Source of the DNA: Magallana gigas
Taxonomy: Eukaryota
Direction of reading: 5' to 3'
Length of the DNA stretch: 64,000 nt
Assembly: GCF_963853765.1 (NCBI RefSeq)
Contig: NC_088854.1
Span: 15,066,001-15,130,000, forward strand
Shown here: one piece after another, positions 17,793 to 30,051 of the stretch
Layout: each line of letters begins with the position of its first letter
How positions within the stretch are numbered: the first letter of the stretch is position 1
Notes under the pieces: generated by a model
Told to the model about the DNA's origin: nothing
Databases searched by the model: none
The model's input: the letters and a program-made list of their open reading frames with translations, nothing else
Program-made: the position numbers and the translations under genes

Positions 17793-18570
17793 TTCACTTT
17801 CTCCATCTCTCATAATTTTTTGTACTATTTGTTCTATTATTAGAACATTATTAGCCATTACTGAAGAAATAAACAAAAACTGATGCACGTCTATCAAAGA
17901 ATCGATATTTCACACAATTCGCAGTGAAGGAAAAAAATGGCGGAGATGGTAGATGAAACAAAGAGGATACAAATCAATATATTAACAAATGTATATAATA
18001 AGGAAGTTTGTTGTTATTTTTAGAATATGCCAGTATATTTTTATATATGTTTTTTTAGGAAGTACAACTTTGGGGGCAAAACAGCCCATCAGTATTCAAT
18101 AAGTATGTAATAATGATGATAATTAATTAGTACCAAATAGTCTCCTAGCTGCCCCCCCCCCTCCGGACATTTTGAGTATGACTTTGTCCAATAATTTTAA
18201 TTCAACAAACTTGTAATGTTTTTAATTTACTTCTCTCGTTGTGCAAGCAAGAAACTATCATTGAAATGTATCCTATCAAACAATGAAATTACTATCTAAA
18301 CATTGAAAAACACTTTCCCGGTAAAGAAGAAAATTAATTGCATCTTTATGTGATAAATCCGGTCCCGGGCGATGAATTACACGTACAAATTCTTGAAATA
18401 AAACAAAGCTCCTTAACATCCGTTACCAGTACAAAAAATATTTCAAGTTATTGCATAGTTTAACCAAAAAATATACACCACAGCTACTAATCAATGTCGA
18501 TATAAGGATTCGTATACATGTTCTCAAGTATGTATATAATCAAAAAAGACAATCATATATTAATTATATG

Positions 18571-18574
<4 letters not shown>

Positions 18575-18644
<70 letters not shown>
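18575..18644. repeat. (AT)n microsatellite, about 35 units
   Basis: Uninterrupted AT dinucleotide run. Confidence 0.95.
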
Positions 18645-18646
<2 letters not shown>

Positions 18647-18902
18647 AACTTCCCGTTTAGTAAAATCCGTTTCAGAAAAAAGAATAATACATAACTCTTT
18701 TTAACGATAACGCATGTTAACAAAAAGGCATATATTCTATTGTTTTCATTCACATAATTACTTTAATTAGTTTGAAAATTGCTTATACCTATAGTTAAAC
18801 AACATCATGTATCCAGTAATATATATGTATATAGGGTGGGATTATTTAAAATATTGTTTATGCAGAAAAAAAGCGGTAGCGCTTGTTAATCCTTAATTAT
18901 AT

Positions 18903-19345
18903 ATTATTTTTTTTATTTATTTCAACTTTGAGCAATAAGCTCATCAGCATTAAACATAATAACATTTATAAACATATGCGAGGCACGCAAAATGCGAAGC
19001 CAGTAGGCTTCAGAGTCTCTGCAGAGCATGCACTCTCGCTATGGAGAACAACATACAGCTTTCATATATGTTTACATCATATAAGATATTGTGAGATAAT
19101 CATACAATAGATATATATAATACTGAAATTATGATTTACCAATGGTGATAGAAAAAAAATTGTATAATTTTAACTAGAGCAATGAATTTCTGAACATAGT
19201 TGCATAGTGAAGATATTTACCAAGGTTACATAACTCTTTGGTATTGTTTGAACTTAATAACTGAACAAGTTTGAACACAGATGGTTTTTTAACATAATAA
19301 TTCTTAATGTATCTTGATCTTAGTGAATTGTAAAGTGGGCATTTT
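18903..19345 (-). mobile_element. 3' end of the interrupted LINE (ORF2 C-terminus, 3' UTR, A-rich tail)
   Basis: CPLYNSLRSRYIKNYYVKKPSVFKLVQLLSSNNTKELCNLGKYL directly continues HFVLK from 23572. It is followed by a UTR with a TGAGC-TTATT-GCTCA hairpin and AATAAATAAAAAAAA. Confidence 0.85.
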
Positions 19346-22300
19346 AACCAGTTAAGAGGCCCCAAAAGGGGAAACAATATTTTTTTTAAACGTCATTATT
19401 TCAATTTAACTTATCGTAAATGGAAGATTGTTTTACAAATTTTGCTGTTTTAATGAACTGTGTATTACATAAAATATGCTACTCATTGCTCTATAAGTCA
19501 ATACACGCTTCTTTCCCGAGAAAACCTAAAGTCACTAGTTGTTTTATGATGTTTTTGATTGACACTGTAAATATAAAGTTGAGGTTTAAACCAAACTCAA
19601 TTAATCTGTGTGTGTAAAGTCGATGAAAATTACTTAAGTAATCTTTCTTCTGAATAGATTTCTTCTGGTTCTGTTCCGTTCCGCAAAATACCATTACCCG
19701 TGTGGATATTGGTATTTAACGGAACGGAACGGAATCTTTCAAATTTTTTAAATAAAGGAAAACATCATAACAACTACTAGCTGTTTGTTTATTTCTATGT
19801 TCTTTTTAGATAAATGAAGCAAATCATTTCATCAATTCAAACATCTTGCATATGTGCATATCACTCCTGTGTTGTGTACAGCTATAACTTTGATTTCATC
19901 TATGATACTACATTACTTACACGGATGATATTACTAGTTTGTTCATCAAGCTAGCAATAACGCAATGTGTATCCCATATTACGTAGAATTCTAAAATATA
20001 ACGAGCACATTCGCAAGGAAAAAGTTTAATATTCATCACTTACCTTCCGTCTGAACAATTTTCCTCTGGTTCCGTTCCGTTCCGCAAAATACCATTACCC
20101 GTGTGGATATTGGTATTTAACGGAACGGAACGGAATCTTTCAAACTTTTTAAATAATGGAAAATATCATAATAACTACTCACCGTTCCTTGAATTTTTTA
20201 TCAGGTTCTTTAAAGATGAATGAGTCTATCAATCAAATCAATTCAGTCATCTTGTGTATTTGCTGATGATTAATTTCAGCGTTTGTGTGCGTGTGCTGCA
20301 TACAACAACAACTCTGTTTTCATTTTTTTTTATCAATTTCATATCATTGTCACGGCAGAACTAACTAGTTGGTTAATTAAGCTAGCAAAAACACAATGCT
20401 TATATCAAGTAGAATTCATATTATACCAAGATCATTCGCAGCGCAGGGATAACATCGATAAAAATACTTGATAGTCTTATTTGAAATAAATTTGAATGAA
20501 TGATGATATAACAAATGTTGTTACCATACTTATAAATAATTTTCTTCTGGTTCCGTTCCGTTCCGCAAAATACCATTACCCGTGTGGATATCGGTATTTA
20601 ACGGAACGGAACGGAACCGTTTAAAAATTTTGAAATATAAAATATATCATAACAACTACTAGCTGTTTGTTTATTTCTATGTTATTTTGAGATAAATGAA
20701 GCAAACCAACAAATCATTTCATCAATTCAAACATCTTGCATATGTGCATATCACTCCTGTGTTGTGTACAGCTATAACTTTTATTTCATCTATGATACTA
20801 CATTACTTACACGGATGATATTACTAGTTTGTTCATCAAGCTAGCAATAACGCAATGTGTATCCCATATTACGTAGAATTCTAAAATATAACGAGCACAT
20901 TCGCAAGGAAAAAGTTTAATATTCATCACTTACCTTCCTTCTGAACAATTTTCTTCTGGTTCCGTTCCGTTCCGCAAAATACCATTACCCGTGTGAATAT
21001 TGGTATTTAACGGAACGGAATCTTTCAAATTTTTTATAATATGAAAAATATCATAACAAGCACGGCATTTATTCAATCTATAACGAACATTTATTTGTTA
21101 CGGGAGTTTACGGGAGATTAAACGAGTTTGTTTATCATATTAACAATATACAATGTTTACATCCAGTAGAATTTTATATTATATCAAACATATTCTGAGG
21201 GATAACATTATTTCCAAAAATAATTGATGGCTTTATTTGTAATACATTAAAATAGATATTAATATAAGAATATGGATTCCATACTTATTAATAATTTTCT
21301 CACGATTCCGTTCCGTTCCGCAAAATACCAATACCCGTGTGGATATTGGTATTTAACGGAACGGAACGGAATCTTTTTTTTTAAAGCCATCTCAGGGCTT
21401 TGTTCGTACGATCAGTTTTATAATAGAGATTAACTGCCACTGATCATGGCTAAATATACATTTACATGCTTTATATGTTAAAAATATAATGTGCACATTA
21501 AATGGATTGCATGTCACTGGATTTTCATATCCATGATACAGCAAGAGACAGATTATCATAATGTTGATTAAATGTGCTTAATCATGTGTCTCTGTATTCC
21601 GCTTGTAAGTTTGTGTTACTAATCAGTGCTAACTTAATAAGTCAGCCCACTCATAAGGCTATCAAGTATTTATTTTTAAAAATGATTATAACCCTGCAAA
21701 TGGATTTGATATAAACTTTGACTTGATGTAAACATTGTCTTTCGCTAGCTTGATTAACCAACTAGCTAATTCTTCCTAAAAAAAATCAAATAATTTATTA
21801 TATAATGAATAAATGTTGCCTTTGTAAAAATATGTTTCACATTTTAAAAAGTTTGAAAGATTCCGTTCCGTTCCGTTAAATACCAATATCCACACGGGTA
21901 ATGGTATTTTGCGGAACGGAACGGAACCAGAAGAAAATTGTTCAGACGGAAGGTAAGTGATGAATATTAAACTTTTTCCTTGCGAATGTGCTCGTTATAT
22001 TTTAGAATAATTCTACGTTATATGGGATACACATTGCGTTATAAACTAGTAATATCATCCGTGTAAGTAATGTAGTATCATAGATGAAATAAAAGTTATA
22101 GCTGTACACAACACAGGAGTGATATGCACATATGCAAGATGTTTGAATTGATGAACTGATTTGTTGGTTTGCTTCATTTATCTCAAAATAACATAGAAAT
22201 AAACAAACAGCTAGTAGTTGTTATGATATATTTTATATTTCAAAATTTTTAAACGGTTCCGTTCCGTTCCGTTAAATACCAATATCCACACGGGTAATGG

Positions 22301-23571
22301 TATTTTGCGGAACGGAACGGAACCAGAAGTAAATTATTTATAAGTATGGTAACAACATTTGTTATATCATCATTCATTCAAATTTATTTCAAATAAGACT
22401 ATCAAGTATTTTTATCGATATTATCCCTGCGCTGCGAATGATCTTGGTATAATATGAATTCTACTTGATATAAGCATTATGTTTTTGCTAGCTTAATTAA
22501 CCAACTAGTTAGTTCTGCCGTGACAATGATATGAAATTGATAAAAAAAAAACCCAAAACAGAGTTGTTGTTGTATGCAGCACACGCACACAAACGCTGAA
22601 ATTAATAATCAGCAAATACACAAGATGACTGAATTGATTTGATTGATAGACTCATTCATTCATCTTTAAAGAACCTGATAAAAAATTCAAGGAACGGTGA
22701 GTAGTTGTTATGATATTTTCCATTATATTTAAAAAGTTTGAAAGATTCCGTTCCGTTCCATTAAATACCAATATCCACACGGGTAATGGTATTTTGCGGA
22801 ACGGAACGGAACCAGAAGAAAATTGTTCAGAAGGAAGGTAAGTGATGAATATTAAACTTTTTCCTTGCGAATGTGCTCGTTATATTTTAGAATTCTACGT
22901 AATATGGGATACACATTGCGTTATTGCTAGCTTGATGAACAAACTAGTAATATCATCCGTGTAAGTAATGTAGTATCATAGATGAAATAAAAGTTATAGC
23001 TGTACACAACACAGGAGTGATATGCACATATGCAAGATGTTTGAATTGATGAAATGATTTGCTTTATTTATCTCAAAAGAACATAGAAATAAACAAACAG
23101 CTAGTAGTTGTTATGATGTTTTCCTTTATTTAAAAAGTTTGAAAGATTCCGTTCCGTTCCGTTAAATACCAATATCCACACGGGTAATGGTATTTTGCGG
23201 AACGGAACGGAACCAGAAGAAATCTATTCAGAAGAAAGATTACTTAGTAATTTTCATCGACTTTACACACACAGATTAATTGAGTTTGGTTTAAACCTCA
23301 ACTTTATATTTACAGTGTCAATCAAACATCATAAAACAACTAGTGACTTTAGGTTTTCTCGGGAAAGAAGCGTGTATTGACTTATAGAGCAATGAGTAGC
23401 ATATTTTATGTATTACACAGTTCATTAAAACAGCAAAATTTGTAAAACAATCTTCCATTTACGATAAGTTAAATTGAAATAATGACGTTTAAAAAAAATA
23501 TTGTTTCCCCTTTTGGGGCCTCTTAACTGGTTCCGTTCCGTTCCGTTCCGTTCCGCAAAGTACCAATAGCC
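19346..23571. mobile_element. Non-coding foldback-like DNA element, 4.2 kb, with inverted arms of about 1.7 kb built from TIR-bounded cassettes
   Basis: 19346-~21025 is a near-identical reverse complement of ~21860-23531. Nine copies of a ~65-bp core TTCCGTTCCGCAAAATACCATTACCC-GTGT-GGATATTGGTATTTAACGGAACGGAA (five forward, four reverse). Right terminus GGCTATTGGTACTTTGCGGAACGG (read inward). TTTT flanks both sides. Confidence 0.9.
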
Positions 23572-25910
23572 TTTTAACACAAAGTGAAAAACATCTTCAA
23601 TGTCGTTGTGATTACAAAAAATACATTTTCTTTCATTTCTGACAATGTTTTTATACCTTCCAGACTCAACTGCTAATGAATGAGATTCTAATCTATACTT
23701 TGTAATACATCTTCTAAATTTCTTAGGTATAGGTTTGAGTAAATAAGACTGCATGCAAAAATTATCTATCAAATGTGAAAAAATATAACATTTTGGAGAG
23801 TTATTGATAACAGCATACAATTCCTGACAATGAACATCTATTATTCTTTTCTTTATAATTGGAAAATGTTTTTGGAACACAAGGTATTCTTGGTGTTCCC
23901 ATAATTCACCAAGACCAATACTATACAATTATGATCTAATAAATGCTGCCCAATTGGAGCATGACCTTTTGGCTTTACAGTCTATGGTAAGATTTACATA
24001 ACGGGATTTTAATATACAGTTTGTGGTTCCAAGTAGTTTAAACCAGTACTTTATCATTCTAATAATTCTCACACACCTTAATGGGAGACATCCCAATTCA
24101 ATGTAAACCATAGCATTATTACAATATGCTTTCACTCCTAATAAACGCTTACAAAACTTCATAAAAACTTTGTCAATATCATTTGCCTTGTGTGATCCCC
24201 AGACTTCACAACCATAACATAAAATGCTTTTAACGTATGTTTCGAACAATGCCAACATTGTTTCGTTATTCAAATACAAATATTTTGTTCTAGAAAGCAT
24301 GGTATAAAGACACTTTTGTCCTTGTTCAGCCAACTTTTTTTCAGTTTCTAAGAATTTACAATTGTACTTAAATATGACACCAAGGGTAGTAAAGCTATCG
24401 ACAATATCTAGTAACTGTCCGTTGTATGTCCATTGTTCATTTGTGTGTAGTTTTCCCCCATTTCTAAAAACAACAACTTTAGTTTTTGCCACATTTACAG
24501 TAAGATGCCACTTACTAGTGTATTCATATAAAATATCTAACATTTTTGTAAACCATCTACAGATTCTGAGAAAATAACCATGTCATCTGCATATAGTAGT
24601 ACAATCTTGAATTTCCTTTGGGATAGTGTCACTACAGAAAAATTCATTTTCAAAATCATTGACATAAAGAGAAAACAAAATAGGTGAAAGAACTTCGCCT
24701 TGCATCAAACCTACATTTTTTCCAAAGTCTTCTGTAATAAAACCATTAACAAGTACTGATGCTCTGACATTAGCATACATAGATTTAATTACTGACAGCA
24801 GTTTACCACGTATTCCAAGTTTTGAAAGTTTGTACCACAAATAATACCTATCTACAGAGTCAAACGCTTTTTGATAGTCAATAAAACAACAATATAACCT
24901 TTTTCTCTGGCTTAGGGTAGAGTTAATAATTGAATACAGACTAAAAATAGCATCTGTTGTCCCTGACATGGGTTTAAAGCCAAATTGAGCATCAGATATA
25001 ACATTATTTTCACAAGACCATTTTAATAATCTAGAGTTCAGAATAGACGAGAAAATTTTTCCAAGGTTGCTGATCAGGCTGATACCGCGATAATTGTTCG
25101 GATCGGAGATGTCGCCCTTTTTATGGATCGGTACGATGAAAGCTCTGGACCACAGAGATGGGAAAAAACCATTGTTTAAAATGTTGTTGAATAAATAATG
25201 TAGAGATGGCAACAGCAGATCTATGTAATATTTAAAAGATTCATTTAACATCAAGTCGTGTTTTTGACTGCGTTTCGAATTTCCTCGAATACGATTTCTT
25301 TGTCCAGCTCTTCAAATATTGATTCTTCATCCAGTTCCGGGTACGGGTCTTCTGGTAAAGTGGTTCCCTCTAGGGTTTTGAAGTACTCAAGAAAGTTGTT
25401 AGCCGTCACAGCAGGTCTCGATGATTTGTGTTTAGGAAACGTTTTGTAAAACAGTTTTGGGTTTGATTTTCTTAGAGCACAAGGCATGTCTCCCTCCTGT
25501 TGTAAATATTGACGCTTTGCGCGGGTCTCGTACTTTTTGTAGATTTGTTTAACAGCATGGAGGTTAACCCTATTATAATCAGATTTGTTCTTATTGAATT
25601 GGGCGAGTGCACAAATATAATCTTGGTATTTTTGTTTACATGTGTTTGTGAACCAGGGTTTATCTTCTGTATAGATCCTATGGATATCTGATGCTGGAGT
25701 GTTACATCTGCGCTCGGGCGGTCTGGTTGGATGTCGGACTTTAAATTCTAGATGTGGAGTCAAAACTTTCTGTAAATCATTAGTAAAGAGTTTAACACAT
25801 AAGTCGAGATTTTCTGCCGTGTCGTAGGGACAGGAGAAGATGTGGCTGGTTATTTTGCTCAGGTTTCGCTCAAGTGCTAAACGACCCTCATGAATCTTTT
25901 CACTGTTCCA
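23572..25910 (-). mobile_element. 5'-truncated, decayed non-LTR retrotransposon (CR1/L2-group-like) ORF2 with RT domain
   Basis: RT motifs YRGISL, QFGF, FIDYQKAFDSV, GLMQGEVLSPILFSLYVND, LLYADD, and C-terminal CIFC..EDVFHFVLK. Frameshifts near 25254 and 24600 and an in-frame TAA at 23929-23931. No endonuclease domain was recognised. Confidence 0.9.
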
Positions 25911-26863: not shown

Positions 26864-29800
26864 ATGGGTGACTGCTATGTCCGGCATGAGGATCGGATCG
26901 CCCGGATCTTTGGGATGTACGGGAAATTCCTGGAGCGCCACCCCGTGAAGATCCTAGTCATCTCCATCACCGTTAACTGTCTCCTGGGCCTCGGAATGCT
27001 GCGACTTGAGGTGGAGAGTGGGGCGGAAAGACTGTACACACCGGTCAATAGCCAAGCCTCCAAAGACAGGTCCTTCTTAGAGAACATATATCCAAGTTCC
27101 TCCGAATTTTATGCACACAAAGAAACAGCCGACTTTGCGGAAGTGTTGATTCTTACAAAAGACAGGGGAAATATGTTAACATCTACGTTCTTGGACGATG
27201 TTACTTCTGTTGACGAATTTGTACGAAACTCCATCTCTATTACCCAATCAGGAACGGTGTACAAATTCAGTGATGTGTGCGCCAAACAGAGCAGTGCATG
27301 CGTTGTATCGGGGGATATCGTCCTGTCCAGCGAATTTAAGCAAATGATGTTGGCAAACAATATAACCTATCCAGAATTCAACCAAACGTCCATTTCTTCT
27401 CTTTTCGCAAGTCCGACCGCTTCCAATGGCGTTCTGACGTCTGCTATTGGACTGAAACTCACGTATTACCTCCGCAGCTCTTATTCTGAACAATGGGAAA
27501 AAGAGTTTGTTAAAACTATACCCAACGCTGTCGTGAATATTTCAGAACTAGCTTACTCCTATTCCGATGCACTTGATAATGAATTGGAGGAAAACATTGG
27601 AGGAGACATTTTGTTTTACTCTTTGACGATGACGTTCATGATGACGTATGCTTGCATTGCCACATCGAGGCTAAACGGTAACTGCATTGCCGACAGGAGC
27701 CTTCTGGGACAAGCAGGGGTTCTAGCAGCAGTTCTCTCTATCCTGTCCTCTTTTGGTTTTGTTAGTCTTATAGGAGTAAAGTTCATGAGCATTGTGGGAG
27801 TAATGCCATTTCTTATAATTGGTAAGCACAAATACATGTACATTGTAACTAGTATAATAGTCACTTCTTATCATCGGTAAGAACATATAACTAGTTTTAA
27901 ATCTAGTTAATTAATATTAAAATCAATTATTCAAACATCCAAAAGCAAACAATAAGAATGAAAACTTCATATTGTTATTTTAAATTAGTTTTTCTTTTTT
28001 AGAAGTCAATTGTTTCACTTTAATAACAATAAACTAAATGTTTCGGGTTTTCTTGAAATTGATTTAATTTTTTTTAATTTTTTTAGGAATTGGAATAGAT
28101 GATGTTTTCATTTTAATGTCTGGAATAGCTGATGCCGAGTCCATAGAAAAATCGAGTGTTTCTGACCGAATCAGTTTCATGATGAGGACCAGTGGTATCG
28201 CTATTACCATTACTTCAATTACGGATTTTCTGGCATTTTCAATTGGAGCAAGTTCGGTTTTCATCAGTGTCAGAAACTTCTGCATATATACTGGTAACCT
28301 CTAACTATTTAATGAACTTTTAAAAATAAGATTTTCATCAGTTTATCTACCCGGCTCAAGCTGATCGCGTGTGCCGATTGAATGTTAAAATGGGTTCGAT
28401 CTCCGGATAAGACCGTAAAATACTAGTATACCATTGATCCCATGTTCTTTAAATCAATGACAACTCTTTTAATATAAACACCGCGGTCAAAAAACTTTAA
28501 AAGGAAAACAATTATCCTCAAAGGATAAAATCTTAACTTATCATAATGAATATTAATATTCCGATAACTTTTTTGGGCCGGTTATTTTGGTCGCTTTTGC
28601 CAGAGAGATAAATAACAAGTACAATGTACTGAGTAATTGTTTTTCTATTCGTTACAGGTGTTGCAGTACTTTTTTGCTACATCAACCAAATAACTATCTT
28701 CTCCTCATGCATTGTCATAAATGAAAAAAGAATCAAGGATAATCGCCACTGCGTTGCTTGTTGGACGAGAACAAAAGACAAGGAATCTCTTCAGATGGAT
28801 GGCAAGACAGGGTGTTCGCTGTACGCATGCGCAGGATACCCACCGAAAGATCGCAGTGATGTCGATAGCCCTCTAGAGAAATACCCAAAACGCCTGATTC
28901 AATTCGTTATGAAATATCTAGTTTTGAAAATAGCAATTTTAGTAATTTTTGCGATTTATTTAGGATTTTCAATATATGGCGTGGTCCATCTTGATCAAGG
29001 ACTCTCTCTGCAAAACCTCGTCACAGAAGATTCTTTCTTTTACAAGTACAGCATGTGGAGAGAGAATTACTTTCGAAGTGAAGTTGTTATGTCCTTTAAC
29101 GTAAAAACAACTCAGACATATTCTTCGTCGTGGACTCAAGGGGTCATAGCATCGATCTTAACAACTGCAAAACAAGACAAGGACATTGACCCTTCGTTTG
29201 AGTTGAACTGGTTAACGGCCTTTAAACAGTCTGCTTTGTATGTGGATACCTCTGAATCTGCATTCATCACAGCCCTCCAGATATTCCTAACAAATGTGCC
29301 ATTATATGCTAGTGATGTGGTTATTGATTCGTCTGGACCGAGTATCACTTCGTCTCGATTTTATCTAAAAACCAACAACATACCATCCACATATGACCAA
29401 GGTCAGATGATGTTGCGCATGCGGGAAGTGACGGCGAATTCTGCCATTCCGATGATTGTTTATTCTCCCCCTTTTATTTTCTTTGAGCAGTTTGTTGAGA
29501 TTCTTCCAAGTACCTTACAGACTGTTGGCATCGCTATAGTGGTCATCATAATTGTCACCATTCTCTTCATGCCCCACCCGACCCTGATCATCATTGTAGG
29601 GGTCACTCTCTTCACCATTCTCCTTGGGGTGTTTGGGTTCATGTTCTTCTGGGACATATCCCTCAGTTCCATCTCCATGATACACCTCGTCATGACCGTA
29701 GGCTTCTCTGTAGATTTCAGCGCCCACATCTGTCATGCCTATCTTGCCGTAGACGCAGACGACAGGGCTACGAAGGTCGATCTTTCCTTGGACCGATCAG

Positions 29801-30051
29801 GAGGACCGATCTTTAACGCTGCGTTTTCAACTCTTCTGGGAGTCTCGATTTTAGGCTTTGCAAATAGCTATATATTTAAGACCTTTGGAAAGATGATGTT
29901 CTTGGTGATATTTTTTGGTCTTGCCCACTCAGTTCTTCTGATTCCAACAGTGCTATCGTTTATAGGACCATTAAAAGCGAGAAAAGTTAAACCTGACGAG
30001 AAGGCGCAATTGGAACGCGAAAACTCTAAATCTAGTTCAAGTCCAATTTGA
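26864..30051 (+). CDS. Patched domain-containing (PTCHD3/patched-related) sterol-sensing-domain RND-type membrane protein, about 852 aa
   Basis: Exons 26864-27821, 28087-28293, 28658-30051 (phase 1 introns). SSD motifs VMPFLIIGIGIDDVFIL and MTVGFSVDFSAHICHAY, GGPIFNAAFST, YIFKTFGKMM. Two luminal loops. Confidence 0.9.

What the first reader, a model, noticed from the sequence alone, without database searches (positions are those of the whole stretch)
19346..23571. 4.2-kb foldback element built as a train of TIR-bounded cassettes
The architecture is A-X-Y-X'-Z-[centre]-X'r-Yr-Xr-Ar. The arms A-X-Y-X' (about 1.7 kb) are near-identical inverted copies. Each cassette (about 350-550 bp) begins with a GGATATTGGTATTTAACGGAACGG-type end and finishes with its imperfect inverse, so each looks like a MITE. 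The central cassette (21341-21891) has perfect inverted ends. The bodies of X, Y and Z are recognisably homologous but strongly diverged (shared ..CTAG..GCTAGCAA..GTAGAATT..), while the ends are almost invariant. Any inward-facing pair of ends defines a potentially mobile sub-element. There is no ORF, so a transposase must act in trans. I do not recognise the family.
Basis: partly seen in the sequence, partly recalled or inferred. Interest (0 to 1): 0.78.

Follow-up and report, generated by a model that had tools for sequence, protein, structure and literature searches.

The report
Broken oyster foldback transposon copy
This 4.2-kb mirror-image stretch is a real, still-polymorphic insertion of a gene-less "foldback" jumping element of the Pacific oyster. 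This copy has lost its middle and one tip, and its arms are built from a satellite repeat already published as CgiSat35, so it is a clear example of a known kind of element.

Summary
Window 19346-23571 has two 1.64-kb inverted arms, 98.8% alike. They are built of 340-480-bp units, each bounded by inverted 24-nt ends that abut across exactly 4 nt (GTGT).

This is one copy of a family of about 25-30 copies on 9 of 10 chromosomes, with termini GGCTATTGGTAC…, an 8-bp target-site duplication and a canonical length of 7.9 kb: [A X Y X' Z]–M–[W X' Y X A].

- **Central cassette:** It is the scar of a 3.2-kb internal deletion with a 1-nt filler.
- **Left tip:** about 40 bp of the left tip is also deleted, across an AAC microhomology.
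- **Not an artefact:** contigs from two independent studies carry the precise empty site, so the insertion is real and recent.
- **Known repeat:** the arm repeats are the published satellite CgiSat35.
- **Transposase:** I found none in any copy examined. The superfamily is unresolved, and the Repbase label for CgiSat35 (IS3EU) fails on both termini and TSD.
- **Conserved layout:** a diverged relative on a metagenome contig keeps the same train of palindromic end-pair junctions while its unit bodies differ, so the junctions are probably reiterated transposase-binding sites.

I found no evidence that single cassettes move. Earlier follow-up notes of this scan report other foldback families carrying CgiSat satellites in this genome, on other DNA. 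This is a new member of a known kind.

The parts
19342..19348 (.). Left copy of the target-site duplication (TTTTAAC, 7 of the 8 nt), fused directly to internal element sequence
   Evidence: Empty-site contig X1 joins 19341 to 23572. An X3 contig reads TTTTAAC and then ACAAAGTGAAAAA, which is window 23579 onward.
19346..19699 (+). Unit A, left arm (flanking domain), lacking about 40 nt of its outer tip (GGCTATTGGTACTTTGCGG(AACGG)n)
   Evidence: Other copies extend 39 nt further out to GGCTATTGG. AAC microhomology at the deletion.
19704..20100 (+). Unit X (CgiSat35-type repeat)
20105..20581 (+). Unit Y (CgiSat35-type repeat)
20586..20990 (+). Unit X' (97% identical to X in the global alignment)
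20995..21336 (+). Unit Z, the innermost unit of the left arm
21341..21629 (+). First 289 nt of the non-coding middle domain M
   Evidence: Matches positions 1-289 in about 17 other copies, which then continue into 3.2-3.6 kb of interior.
21630..21630 (.). Deletion junction: a 1-nt filler T replaces about 3.2 kb (the rest of M, one junction and the inner part of unit W)
   Evidence: Contigs of four runs stop at 21629 and 21631 and continue into the full-length interior.
21631..21891 (-). Outer 261 nt of right-arm unit W (a Z-like unit)
   Evidence: (reverse complement of C against Y z 23.9 and against Z z 20.6)
21896..23177 (-). Right arm units X', Y, X
23182..23571 (-). Unit A of the right arm with the intact terminus …CCGCAAAGTACCAATAGCC
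23572..23579 (.). Right copy of the 8-bp target-site duplication, TTTTAACA

Best explanation
Window 19342-23571 is one insertion of a non-autonomous, foldback-type cut-and-paste DNA transposon of the Pacific oyster. The canonical family member is 7.9 kb: two roughly 2.3-kb inverted arms around a roughly 2.9-kb non-coding middle domain M. Each arm is a terminal flanking unit A followed by a tandem array of 340-480-bp units (X, Y, X', then Z or W).

Every unit boundary is a roughly 70-bp imperfect palindrome made of two inverted copies of the terminal sequence (GGNTAWTGGTAYTTWRCGG(AACGG)n) set 4 nt apart. I infer that these are reiterated binding sites for a transposase supplied in trans, and that the array grew by unequal exchange or slippage between them.

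The window copy inserted at TTTTAACA inside an old LINE remnant. It is a damaged derivative. An end-joining-type deletion with a 1-nt filler removed 3.2 kb of the middle, which created the apparent 'central cassette'. A roughly 40-bp deletion across an AAC microhomology removed the left terminus, so the copy is now immobile as a whole.

Shown: the family, its termini, the TSD, both deletions, the empty-site allele, the identity of the arm repeat with CgiSat35, and conservation of the junction layout in a relative. Inferred: the transposase-binding role of the junctions, how the array grew, and the order of insertion and deletions.
For: - **Family:** the internal end motif occurs 253 times in the genome, in clusters of + then - matches. 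The terminal motif occurs 85 times at up to 2 mismatches, and about 20 +/- pairs lie 5-23 kb apart on 9 contigs.
- **TSD:** 8-bp TSDs are perfect in L012, L013, L015, L039 and the 666-bp relative L036, and 7/8 in L011.
- **Internal deletion:** the centre of the window copy is split by 3.2-3.6 kb in other copies. The missing piece includes the part of unit W that aligns with Y and Z.
- **Empty site:** a 636-nt X1 contig joins 19341 to 23572 with no extra letters, and an X3 contig reads through the same empty site.
- **Arms not identical:** 98.77%, with 7 indels.
- **No coding capacity:** in the window copy or in the interiors of 12 other copies.
- **Ends versus bodies:** the ends are near-invariant while the bodies diverge. 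The junctions fold as hairpins of -26 to -31 kcal/mol, z -7.7 to -9.6.
- **Relative:** metagenome contig L044 shares only the terminus (66 nt, 85%) and the junction palindromes, and has the same train layout.
- **CgiSat35:** its consensus text matches units Y and X, and 36- and 39-nt strings from it match exactly.
- **Parallel:** Tetris and Galileo have the same layout, and tandem repeats in Galileo TIRs hold extra transposase-binding sites (PMC4079207).
Against: No autonomous copy or transposase was found, so the superfamily and the binding-site role are untested. None of the four runs laid shows the filled site or the 21630 junction, so the internal structure of this particular copy rests on the assembly alone. 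L014 has no matching TSD. The Repbase label attached to CgiSat35 (IS3EU) disagrees with the termini and TSD seen here, and I could not inspect the Repbase entry.
Confidence: 0.85

Rival explanations
1. A train of independently mobile MITEs: each unit is its own miniature transposon, and the array grew by repeated insertion or by multimerisation of an excised circle with abutted ends.
For: Each unit carries inverted ends that match the true terminus at 19-21 of 24 positions. End pairs abut as in transposon circle junctions. The layout is kept in the diverged relative L044. A 666-bp two-unit relative with a perfect TSD exists (L036).
Against: Units have no 8-bp TSDs. The spacer is an invariant 4 nt within the family. 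Unit order is the same in the window copy, L011 and L015. The one-armed copies examined end inside units, not at internal ends, and have no TSD. L036 uses terminal-type outer ends, not internal ones. The 'perfect' central cassette is a deletion scar.
Confidence: 0.07
2. An assembly artefact: a chimeric palindromic long read folded a single arm back on itself.
For: No contig in the four runs laid spans the left filled junction or the 21630 junction.
Against: The arms differ at 20 positions and 7 indels, including one of 16 nt. Unit Z is on one side only. Both flanks are unique and are contiguous in empty-site alleles, with TTTTAAC on both sides of the insertion. About 20 other copies have the same inverted-arm design.
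Confidence: 0.03
3. A plain satellite (CgiSat35) array that suffered a local inversion, not a transposon.
For: The units were published as a satellite DNA (PMC8268682).
Against: Copies are dispersed, share defined termini and have 8-bp TSDs. There is a precise empty-site allele.
Confidence: 0.02
4. A non-autonomous Helitron/Helentron, the usual carrier of satellite-like repeats in oysters, with the palindromes as its subterminal hairpins.
For: Most C. gigas satellites are Helitron-linked, and the junctions form strong hairpins.
Against: Kilobase-long terminal inverted repeats and 8-bp TSDs. Rolling-circle elements make no TSD (established knowledge). The terminus itself is a half-site that does not fold.
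Confidence: 0.01

Closest known systems
Tetris, foldback transposon of Drosophila virilis (PMC4079207)
   Same: [quoted passage not shown] A non-coding middle domain. 8-10-bp TSDs. Many rearranged copies. No autonomous partner found. The repeats double as a satellite DNA.
   Different: No sequence relation. Here the repeats are 340-480 bp rather than 220 bp, and each is bounded by two inverted terminal-like motifs that form a palindromic junction.
Galileo (P superfamily) and FB elements of Drosophila
   Same: Foldback architecture. Tandem repeats inside the TIRs carry extra transposase-binding sites (as cited in PMC4079207).
   Different: Galileo and some FB copies encode a transposase. None was found here, and superfamily membership is untested.
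CgiSat35, satellite DNA of Crassostrea gigas (PMC8268682)
   Same: The published 690-bp consensus reads through units Y and X and their junction. 36- and 39-nt strings from it match the window exactly.
   Different: The paper lists it only as a low-copy satellite with the Repbase label DNA/IS3EU. In the papers I searched, the foldback element, its termini, TSD and palindromic junctions are not described.
Other foldback families of this oyster genome noted by this scan (carrying CgiSat15, CgiSat25, CgiSat33)
   Same: According to those notes, each has arms that are arrays of a published satellite; those carrying CgiSat25 and CgiSat33 are described as gene-less young foldback transposons (AI notes, not checked here).
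   Different: Different sequences, repeat sizes and TSDs. Those notes mention no palindromic end-pair junctions.

Membership tests
Foldback-type DNA transposon (structural class) | Long terminal inverted repeats that make up most of the element | tested here: met
   Arms of 1.64 kb in a 4.2-kb copy, about 2.3 kb in 7.9-kb copies
Foldback-type DNA transposon (structural class) | TIRs built of tandem sub-repeats | tested here: met
   Units of 340-480 bp, homologous to each other
Foldback-type DNA transposon (structural class) | Target-site duplication and dispersed copies | tested here: met
   8-bp TSD perfect in 5 copies. About 25-30 copies on 9 contigs. Empty-site allele.
CgiSat35 satellite DNA | Sequence identity with the published consensus | tested here: met
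   Roughly 430 nt of the consensus read against units Y and X by eye. Two strings of 36 and 39 nt match exactly.
IS3EU superfamily (the Repbase label of CgiSat35) | TA…TA termini | tested here: not met
   Termini are GGCTATTGG…CCAATAGCC in all copies. Criterion taken from PMC10045372.
IS3EU superfamily (the Repbase label of CgiSat35) | TSD usually 6 bp | tested here: not met
   8 bp
MITE (for each single cassette) | Own TSD around each unit, and solo copies elsewhere | tested here: not met
   Units are separated by an invariant GTGT with no 8-bp repeats. No unit-ended copy with a TSD among 7 partial copies. The genome-wide catalogue was incomplete.
Mutator/MULE superfamily (where most foldback elements are placed) | MULE transposase in a family member; TSD about 8-11 bp | tested here: inconclusive
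   The TSD length fits. None of 81 MULE-domain matches lies inside a copy, and one lies 2 kb outside the copy at C4:56749039.
hAT superfamily | 8-bp TSD, YARNG termini, hAT transposase | tested here: not met
   The TSD length fits, but the termini begin GGCTA. None of 123 hAT dimerisation-domain matches lies inside a copy.
Merlin superfamily | 8-9-bp TSD, IS1595-type transposase in a family member | tested here: inconclusive
   The TSD length fits. None of 27 matches lies inside a copy, and the four Merlin copies read contain none of the three end motifs tested.
Helitron/Helentron | No TSD, no TIRs, 3' hairpin | tested here: not met
   8-bp TSDs and kilobase TIRs

The most novel reading that the evidence does not exclude
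The palindromic end-pair junction (two transposon ends set head to head, 3-4 nt apart) is a selected, lineage-wide building block. The arms would then be multimers of a miniature element, formed for example from circular or abutted-end intermediates. Any inward-facing pair of ends could serve as an alternative terminus, which would make this a 'MITE train' architecture not described for eukaryotic cut-and-paste transposons.
Probability: 0.1. Interest if true: 0.6.

Novelty: new member of a known kind. Interest (0 to 1): 0.3.

Why it matters
It gives the published oyster satellite CgiSat35 a carrier: a young, still-polymorphic foldback transposon with defined termini and an 8-bp TSD. It also shows that the satellite's Repbase label (IS3EU) does not fit the element's ends. 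This adds one more case to the pattern that oyster satellites live inside mobile elements. The one feature worth a specialist's second look is the conserved junction of two inverted terminal motifs at every repeat boundary, which is kept in a diverged relative whose unit bodies are unrelated. That is a natural candidate for reiterated transposase-binding sites once the transposase is known.

Tried and rejected
1. **Transposase inside the family.** Stop-to-stop ORFs of 12 copies and of 11 solo-end loci were listed, and 32 of them were scanned against Pfam. The only hits were a nested LTR-retrotransposon RNase H (L017), a 177-bp tandem repeat read as a false ORF (L018), a neighbouring pogo transposase 6.5 kb away (L028), and host genes.
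2. **Whole-genome Pfam searches.** MULE, hAT, Merlin and P-type domains gave no match inside any known copy.
3. **Larger copies.** The 17.4-kb copy at C4:45225753-45243184 was never read.
4. **Sister family.** The L044-type family is absent from this genome.
5. **Sub-element mobility.** No TSD was found at internal ends of one-armed copies.
6. **Insertion versus deletion.** I rejected the idea that the 3.2-kb interior is an insertion into an ancestral central MITE. There is no TSD overlap at positions 289/291, the window has an extra filler T, and the missing piece includes homologous unit sequence.
7. **Other searches.** Rfam gave nothing. Earlier scan notes found by sequence gave nothing.
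Full report
**Observation.** The stretch is as described. Repeat finding on window 18500-24500 gives long inverted pairs of 521 nt at 98%, 508 nt at 99%, 311 nt at 99% and 209 nt at 100%, plus a roughly 109-nt element repeated directly eight times at 346-951-nt spacing. The two end motifs each occur ten times in the 64-kb window, all within 19676-23571, against none expected by chance. Mapping a degenerate end motif shows that every unit is bounded by inverted ends, and that abutting ends are always exactly 4 nt apart (GTGT, or ACAC on the other arm). Aligned globally, the arms (19346-20990 against the reverse complement of 21896-23532) are 98.77% identical, with 20 mismatches and 7 indels, one of them 16 nt. 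No ORF longer than 67 aa lies inside the element, and there is no Rfam match.

**It is one copy of a dispersed family.** The genome is 564 Mb in 29 contigs, ten of them chromosome-sized. An earlier scan note calls it an oyster, and the match to a C. gigas satellite agrees. The internal end motif occurs 253 times at up to 1 mismatch, always in clusters of + matches followed by - matches. Comparing flanks across six copies shows where similarity stops. The true terminus is GGCTATTGGTACTTTGCGG(AACGG)n…, which has the same design as the internal ends. That terminal motif occurs 85 times at up to 2 mismatches. About 20 +/- pairs lie 5-23 kb apart on nine contigs, and there are some solo ends and two short relatives. 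Target-site duplications of 8 bp are perfect in L012 (AATAATCC), L013 (TGAAATAC), L015 (CAACTTTC), L039 (TTCTTGTA) and the 666-bp relative L036 (GTTCAGCC). L011 has 7/8, and L014 has none.

**The 'central cassette' is a deletion scar.** I searched the genome with the 551-bp centre (21341-21891). Positions 1-289 matched 17 other places and positions 291-551 about 20 places, at 92-99% identity. Where both halves fall in one copy they usually lie 3.2-3.6 kb apart. The canonical copy (L015, 7,871 bp) reads [A X Y X' Z]–M–[W X' Y X A].
- M is a non-coding middle domain of 2.9-3.3 kb, itself bounded by two inward-facing ends.
- W is a Z-like unit with a roughly 470-bp insert.
- In the window, the first 289 nt of M are joined through a single filler T (21630) to the last 261 nt of W. 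Full copies read …ATCAGTGC|AGTCTAATT… and …TTTAATCCC|AACTTAATA… at the two breakpoints.
- The missing piece contains the part of W that aligns with Y and Z. There is no duplicated target at the junction. The window form is therefore derived by deletion, not ancestral.

This also explains why Z appears on one side only and why the centre seemed to have 'perfect' inverted ends. Those are the outward ends of two different units. A second, independent deletion derivative (L039, 4,989 bp) has a perfect TSD.

**The left tip is missing, and the insertion is polymorphic.** Other copies extend 39 nt beyond window position 19346. I laid Logan contigs of four runs from four studies on 18900-24100.
- One 636-nt contig (X1) lies on 19034-19341 and, without a break, on 23572-23904. 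This is a precise empty site.
- An X3 contig reads to 19348 and then ACAAAGTGAAAAA, which is window 23579 onward.
- The target was therefore TTTTAACA. It is intact on the right (23572-23579). On the left, TTTTAAC is fused to CAGTTAAG of unit A, which fits a roughly 40-bp deletion across the AAC shared by the TSD and …CGGAAC|CAGTT.
- No contig of these runs shows the filled junctions or the 21630 junction. Contigs reaching 21629 or 21631 continue into the full-length interior and come from other copies.

The insertion is thus absent from at least two independent samples, which points to a recent event. The internal structure of this copy rests on the assembly alone.

The artefact reading is nevertheless very unlikely. 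The arms are not identical. The flanks are unique and are contiguous in the empty allele, with a TSD on both sides. The inverted-arm design is shared by about 20 other copies.

**No gene, in this copy or in the family.**
- *ORF scans:* interiors of 12 copies hold only scattered ORFs of 90-130 aa with junk-like translations and no Pfam match.
- *Longer interiors:* they differ by indels and nested elements, namely an LTR-retrotransposon RNase H in L017 and a 177-bp tandem repeat in L018.
- *Solo ends:* 11 loci with a solo end gave host genes, an unrelated pogo element or nothing.
- *Whole-genome Pfam searches:* MULE gave 81 matches, hAT 123, Merlin 27 and a P-type domain 1. None lies inside a known copy. 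One MULE match lies 2 kb outside a copy on C4, which I could not follow up.

The mobilising enzyme, and with it the superfamily, stays open. An 8-bp TSD with GG…CC termini is compatible with MULE, Merlin or P-like enzymes. It is a poor fit to hAT termini.

**What the junctions are.** X, Y, Z and W are homologous (shuffle z-scores 29, 31, 5.5). Their alignment shows near-invariant first ~70 and last ~50 columns around bodies full of substitutions and indels. The bodies of A and M are unrelated to them. Each junction can fold as a roughly 32-bp hairpin (-26 to -31 kcal/mol, z -7.7 to -9.6), whereas the terminus is a half-site that does not fold. In diverged relatives within this genome the spacer keeps its 4-nt length but not its sequence: AGAC in L036, ATAT in L028, ATGT in L037.

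A scan of metagenome contigs found L044 (MOXH01005038.1). It starts with a terminus 85% identical over 66 nt. It then carries an A-like unit and three ~360-nt tandem units separated by palindromes of two inverted end motifs with a 3-nt spacer. Its unit bodies have no similarity to those here, and this sister family is absent from the oyster genome.

Conservation of the ends, their pairing and their spacing, but not of what lies between, argues that the junctions are functional. The most economical reading is reiterated transposase-binding sites, as reported for the tandem repeats in Galileo TIRs and proposed for Tetris (PMC4079207). This is inference. No binding was tested.

**Are single cassettes mobile?** I found no support. 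Units have no 8-bp TSDs. The unit order is the same in the window copy, L011 and L015. Seven one-armed or partial copies end inside units or in unrelated DNA, and none has a TSD after an internal end. The short relative L036 uses terminal-type outer ends. The catalogue was not exhaustive, because listings are capped at 100 places, so I leave this reading at a low but non-zero probability.

**Comparison with what is known.** The supplement of the C. gigas satellitome paper holds one sequence containing the junction, CgiSat35 (690-bp monomer, 0.02% of the genome, Repbase label DNA/IS3EU; PMC8268682). About 430 nt of its consensus read through units Y and X, and strings of 36 and 39 nt from it match the window exactly. 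No other paper in the library mentions CgiSat35, and the paper does not describe a foldback carrier. IS3EU elements are defined by TA…TA termini and usually 6-bp TSDs (PMC10045372). Both were tested here and not met, so I do not file the element under IS3EU, and I could not inspect the Repbase entry behind the label. Structurally the closest described element is Tetris of D. virilis: a flanking domain, tandem repeats sharing a stretch with it, a non-coding middle, 8-10-bp TSDs, a missing autonomous partner, and repeats that double as a satellite. Earlier notes of this scan report other foldback families in this genome carrying CgiSat15, CgiSat25 and CgiSat33. These are unchecked leads, but they suggest the kind is common here.

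**Verdict.** This is a real, recent insertion of a non-autonomous foldback transposon, damaged by an internal deletion and a terminal deletion. Its arm repeats are a published satellite. Its inferences about a central MITE and independently mobile cassettes are not supported. It is a new member of a known kind, and interest is modest. The conserved palindromic end-pair junctions are the only feature that might repay further work.

Noticed in passing
window 23572-25763 (minus strand): A run of ORFs with a reverse-transcriptase domain (RVT_1, E 7e-24, at 24583-25254). The foldback element sits in the 3' part of an old non-LTR retrotransposon remnant.
   Followed up: partly
window 26864-27880 and 28795-30051 (+): Two ORFs with Patched / sterol-sensing-domain matches, and a weak AcrB-like match. 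They are probably exons of a Patched/NPC1/Dispatched-type gene.
   Followed up: no
L030 (G000:C8:48581050-48591049): Two partial arms of this family in the same (direct) orientation bracket about 7 kb that holds a 582-aa ankyrin-repeat ORF. This could be a segmental duplication or a gene caught between transposon fragments. The right-hand 'end' is an internal junction, not a terminus.
   Followed up: partly
L018:4350-5066 (G000:C6, inside a family copy): A 239-aa 'ORF' is really about four tandem copies of a 177-bp repeat nested in the middle domain. The size matches several published 177-179-bp oyster satellites.
   Followed up: no
L029:442-785 and L015:5031-5258: A short palindromic element (GTACCTGTTTGGGAGGGTAACAGTTGAAATTGACACCCC… and its inverse) occurs both inside a family copy and next to a solo terminus. 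It is probably an unrelated MITE family.
   Followed up: no
G000:C4:56746780-56747028: A MULE transposase-domain match in a 449-aa open frame lies 2 kb outside the left terminus of the family copy at C4:56749039. A rough estimate puts the chance of such proximity at about 0.03. I could not fetch it.
   Followed up: no
L034 and L035 (G000:C1:58094260 and C1:60181500): Two one-armed copies have identical unit spacing and the same flanking ORFs 2 Mb apart, which suggests a segmental duplication that includes the transposon arm.
   Followed up: no
L045 (SPJI01005712.1): A metagenome contig carries a diverged junction-like palindrome next to a Gag-like ORF of 337 aa with a CCHC zinc knuckle. The two are probably unrelated neighbours.
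   Followed up: partly
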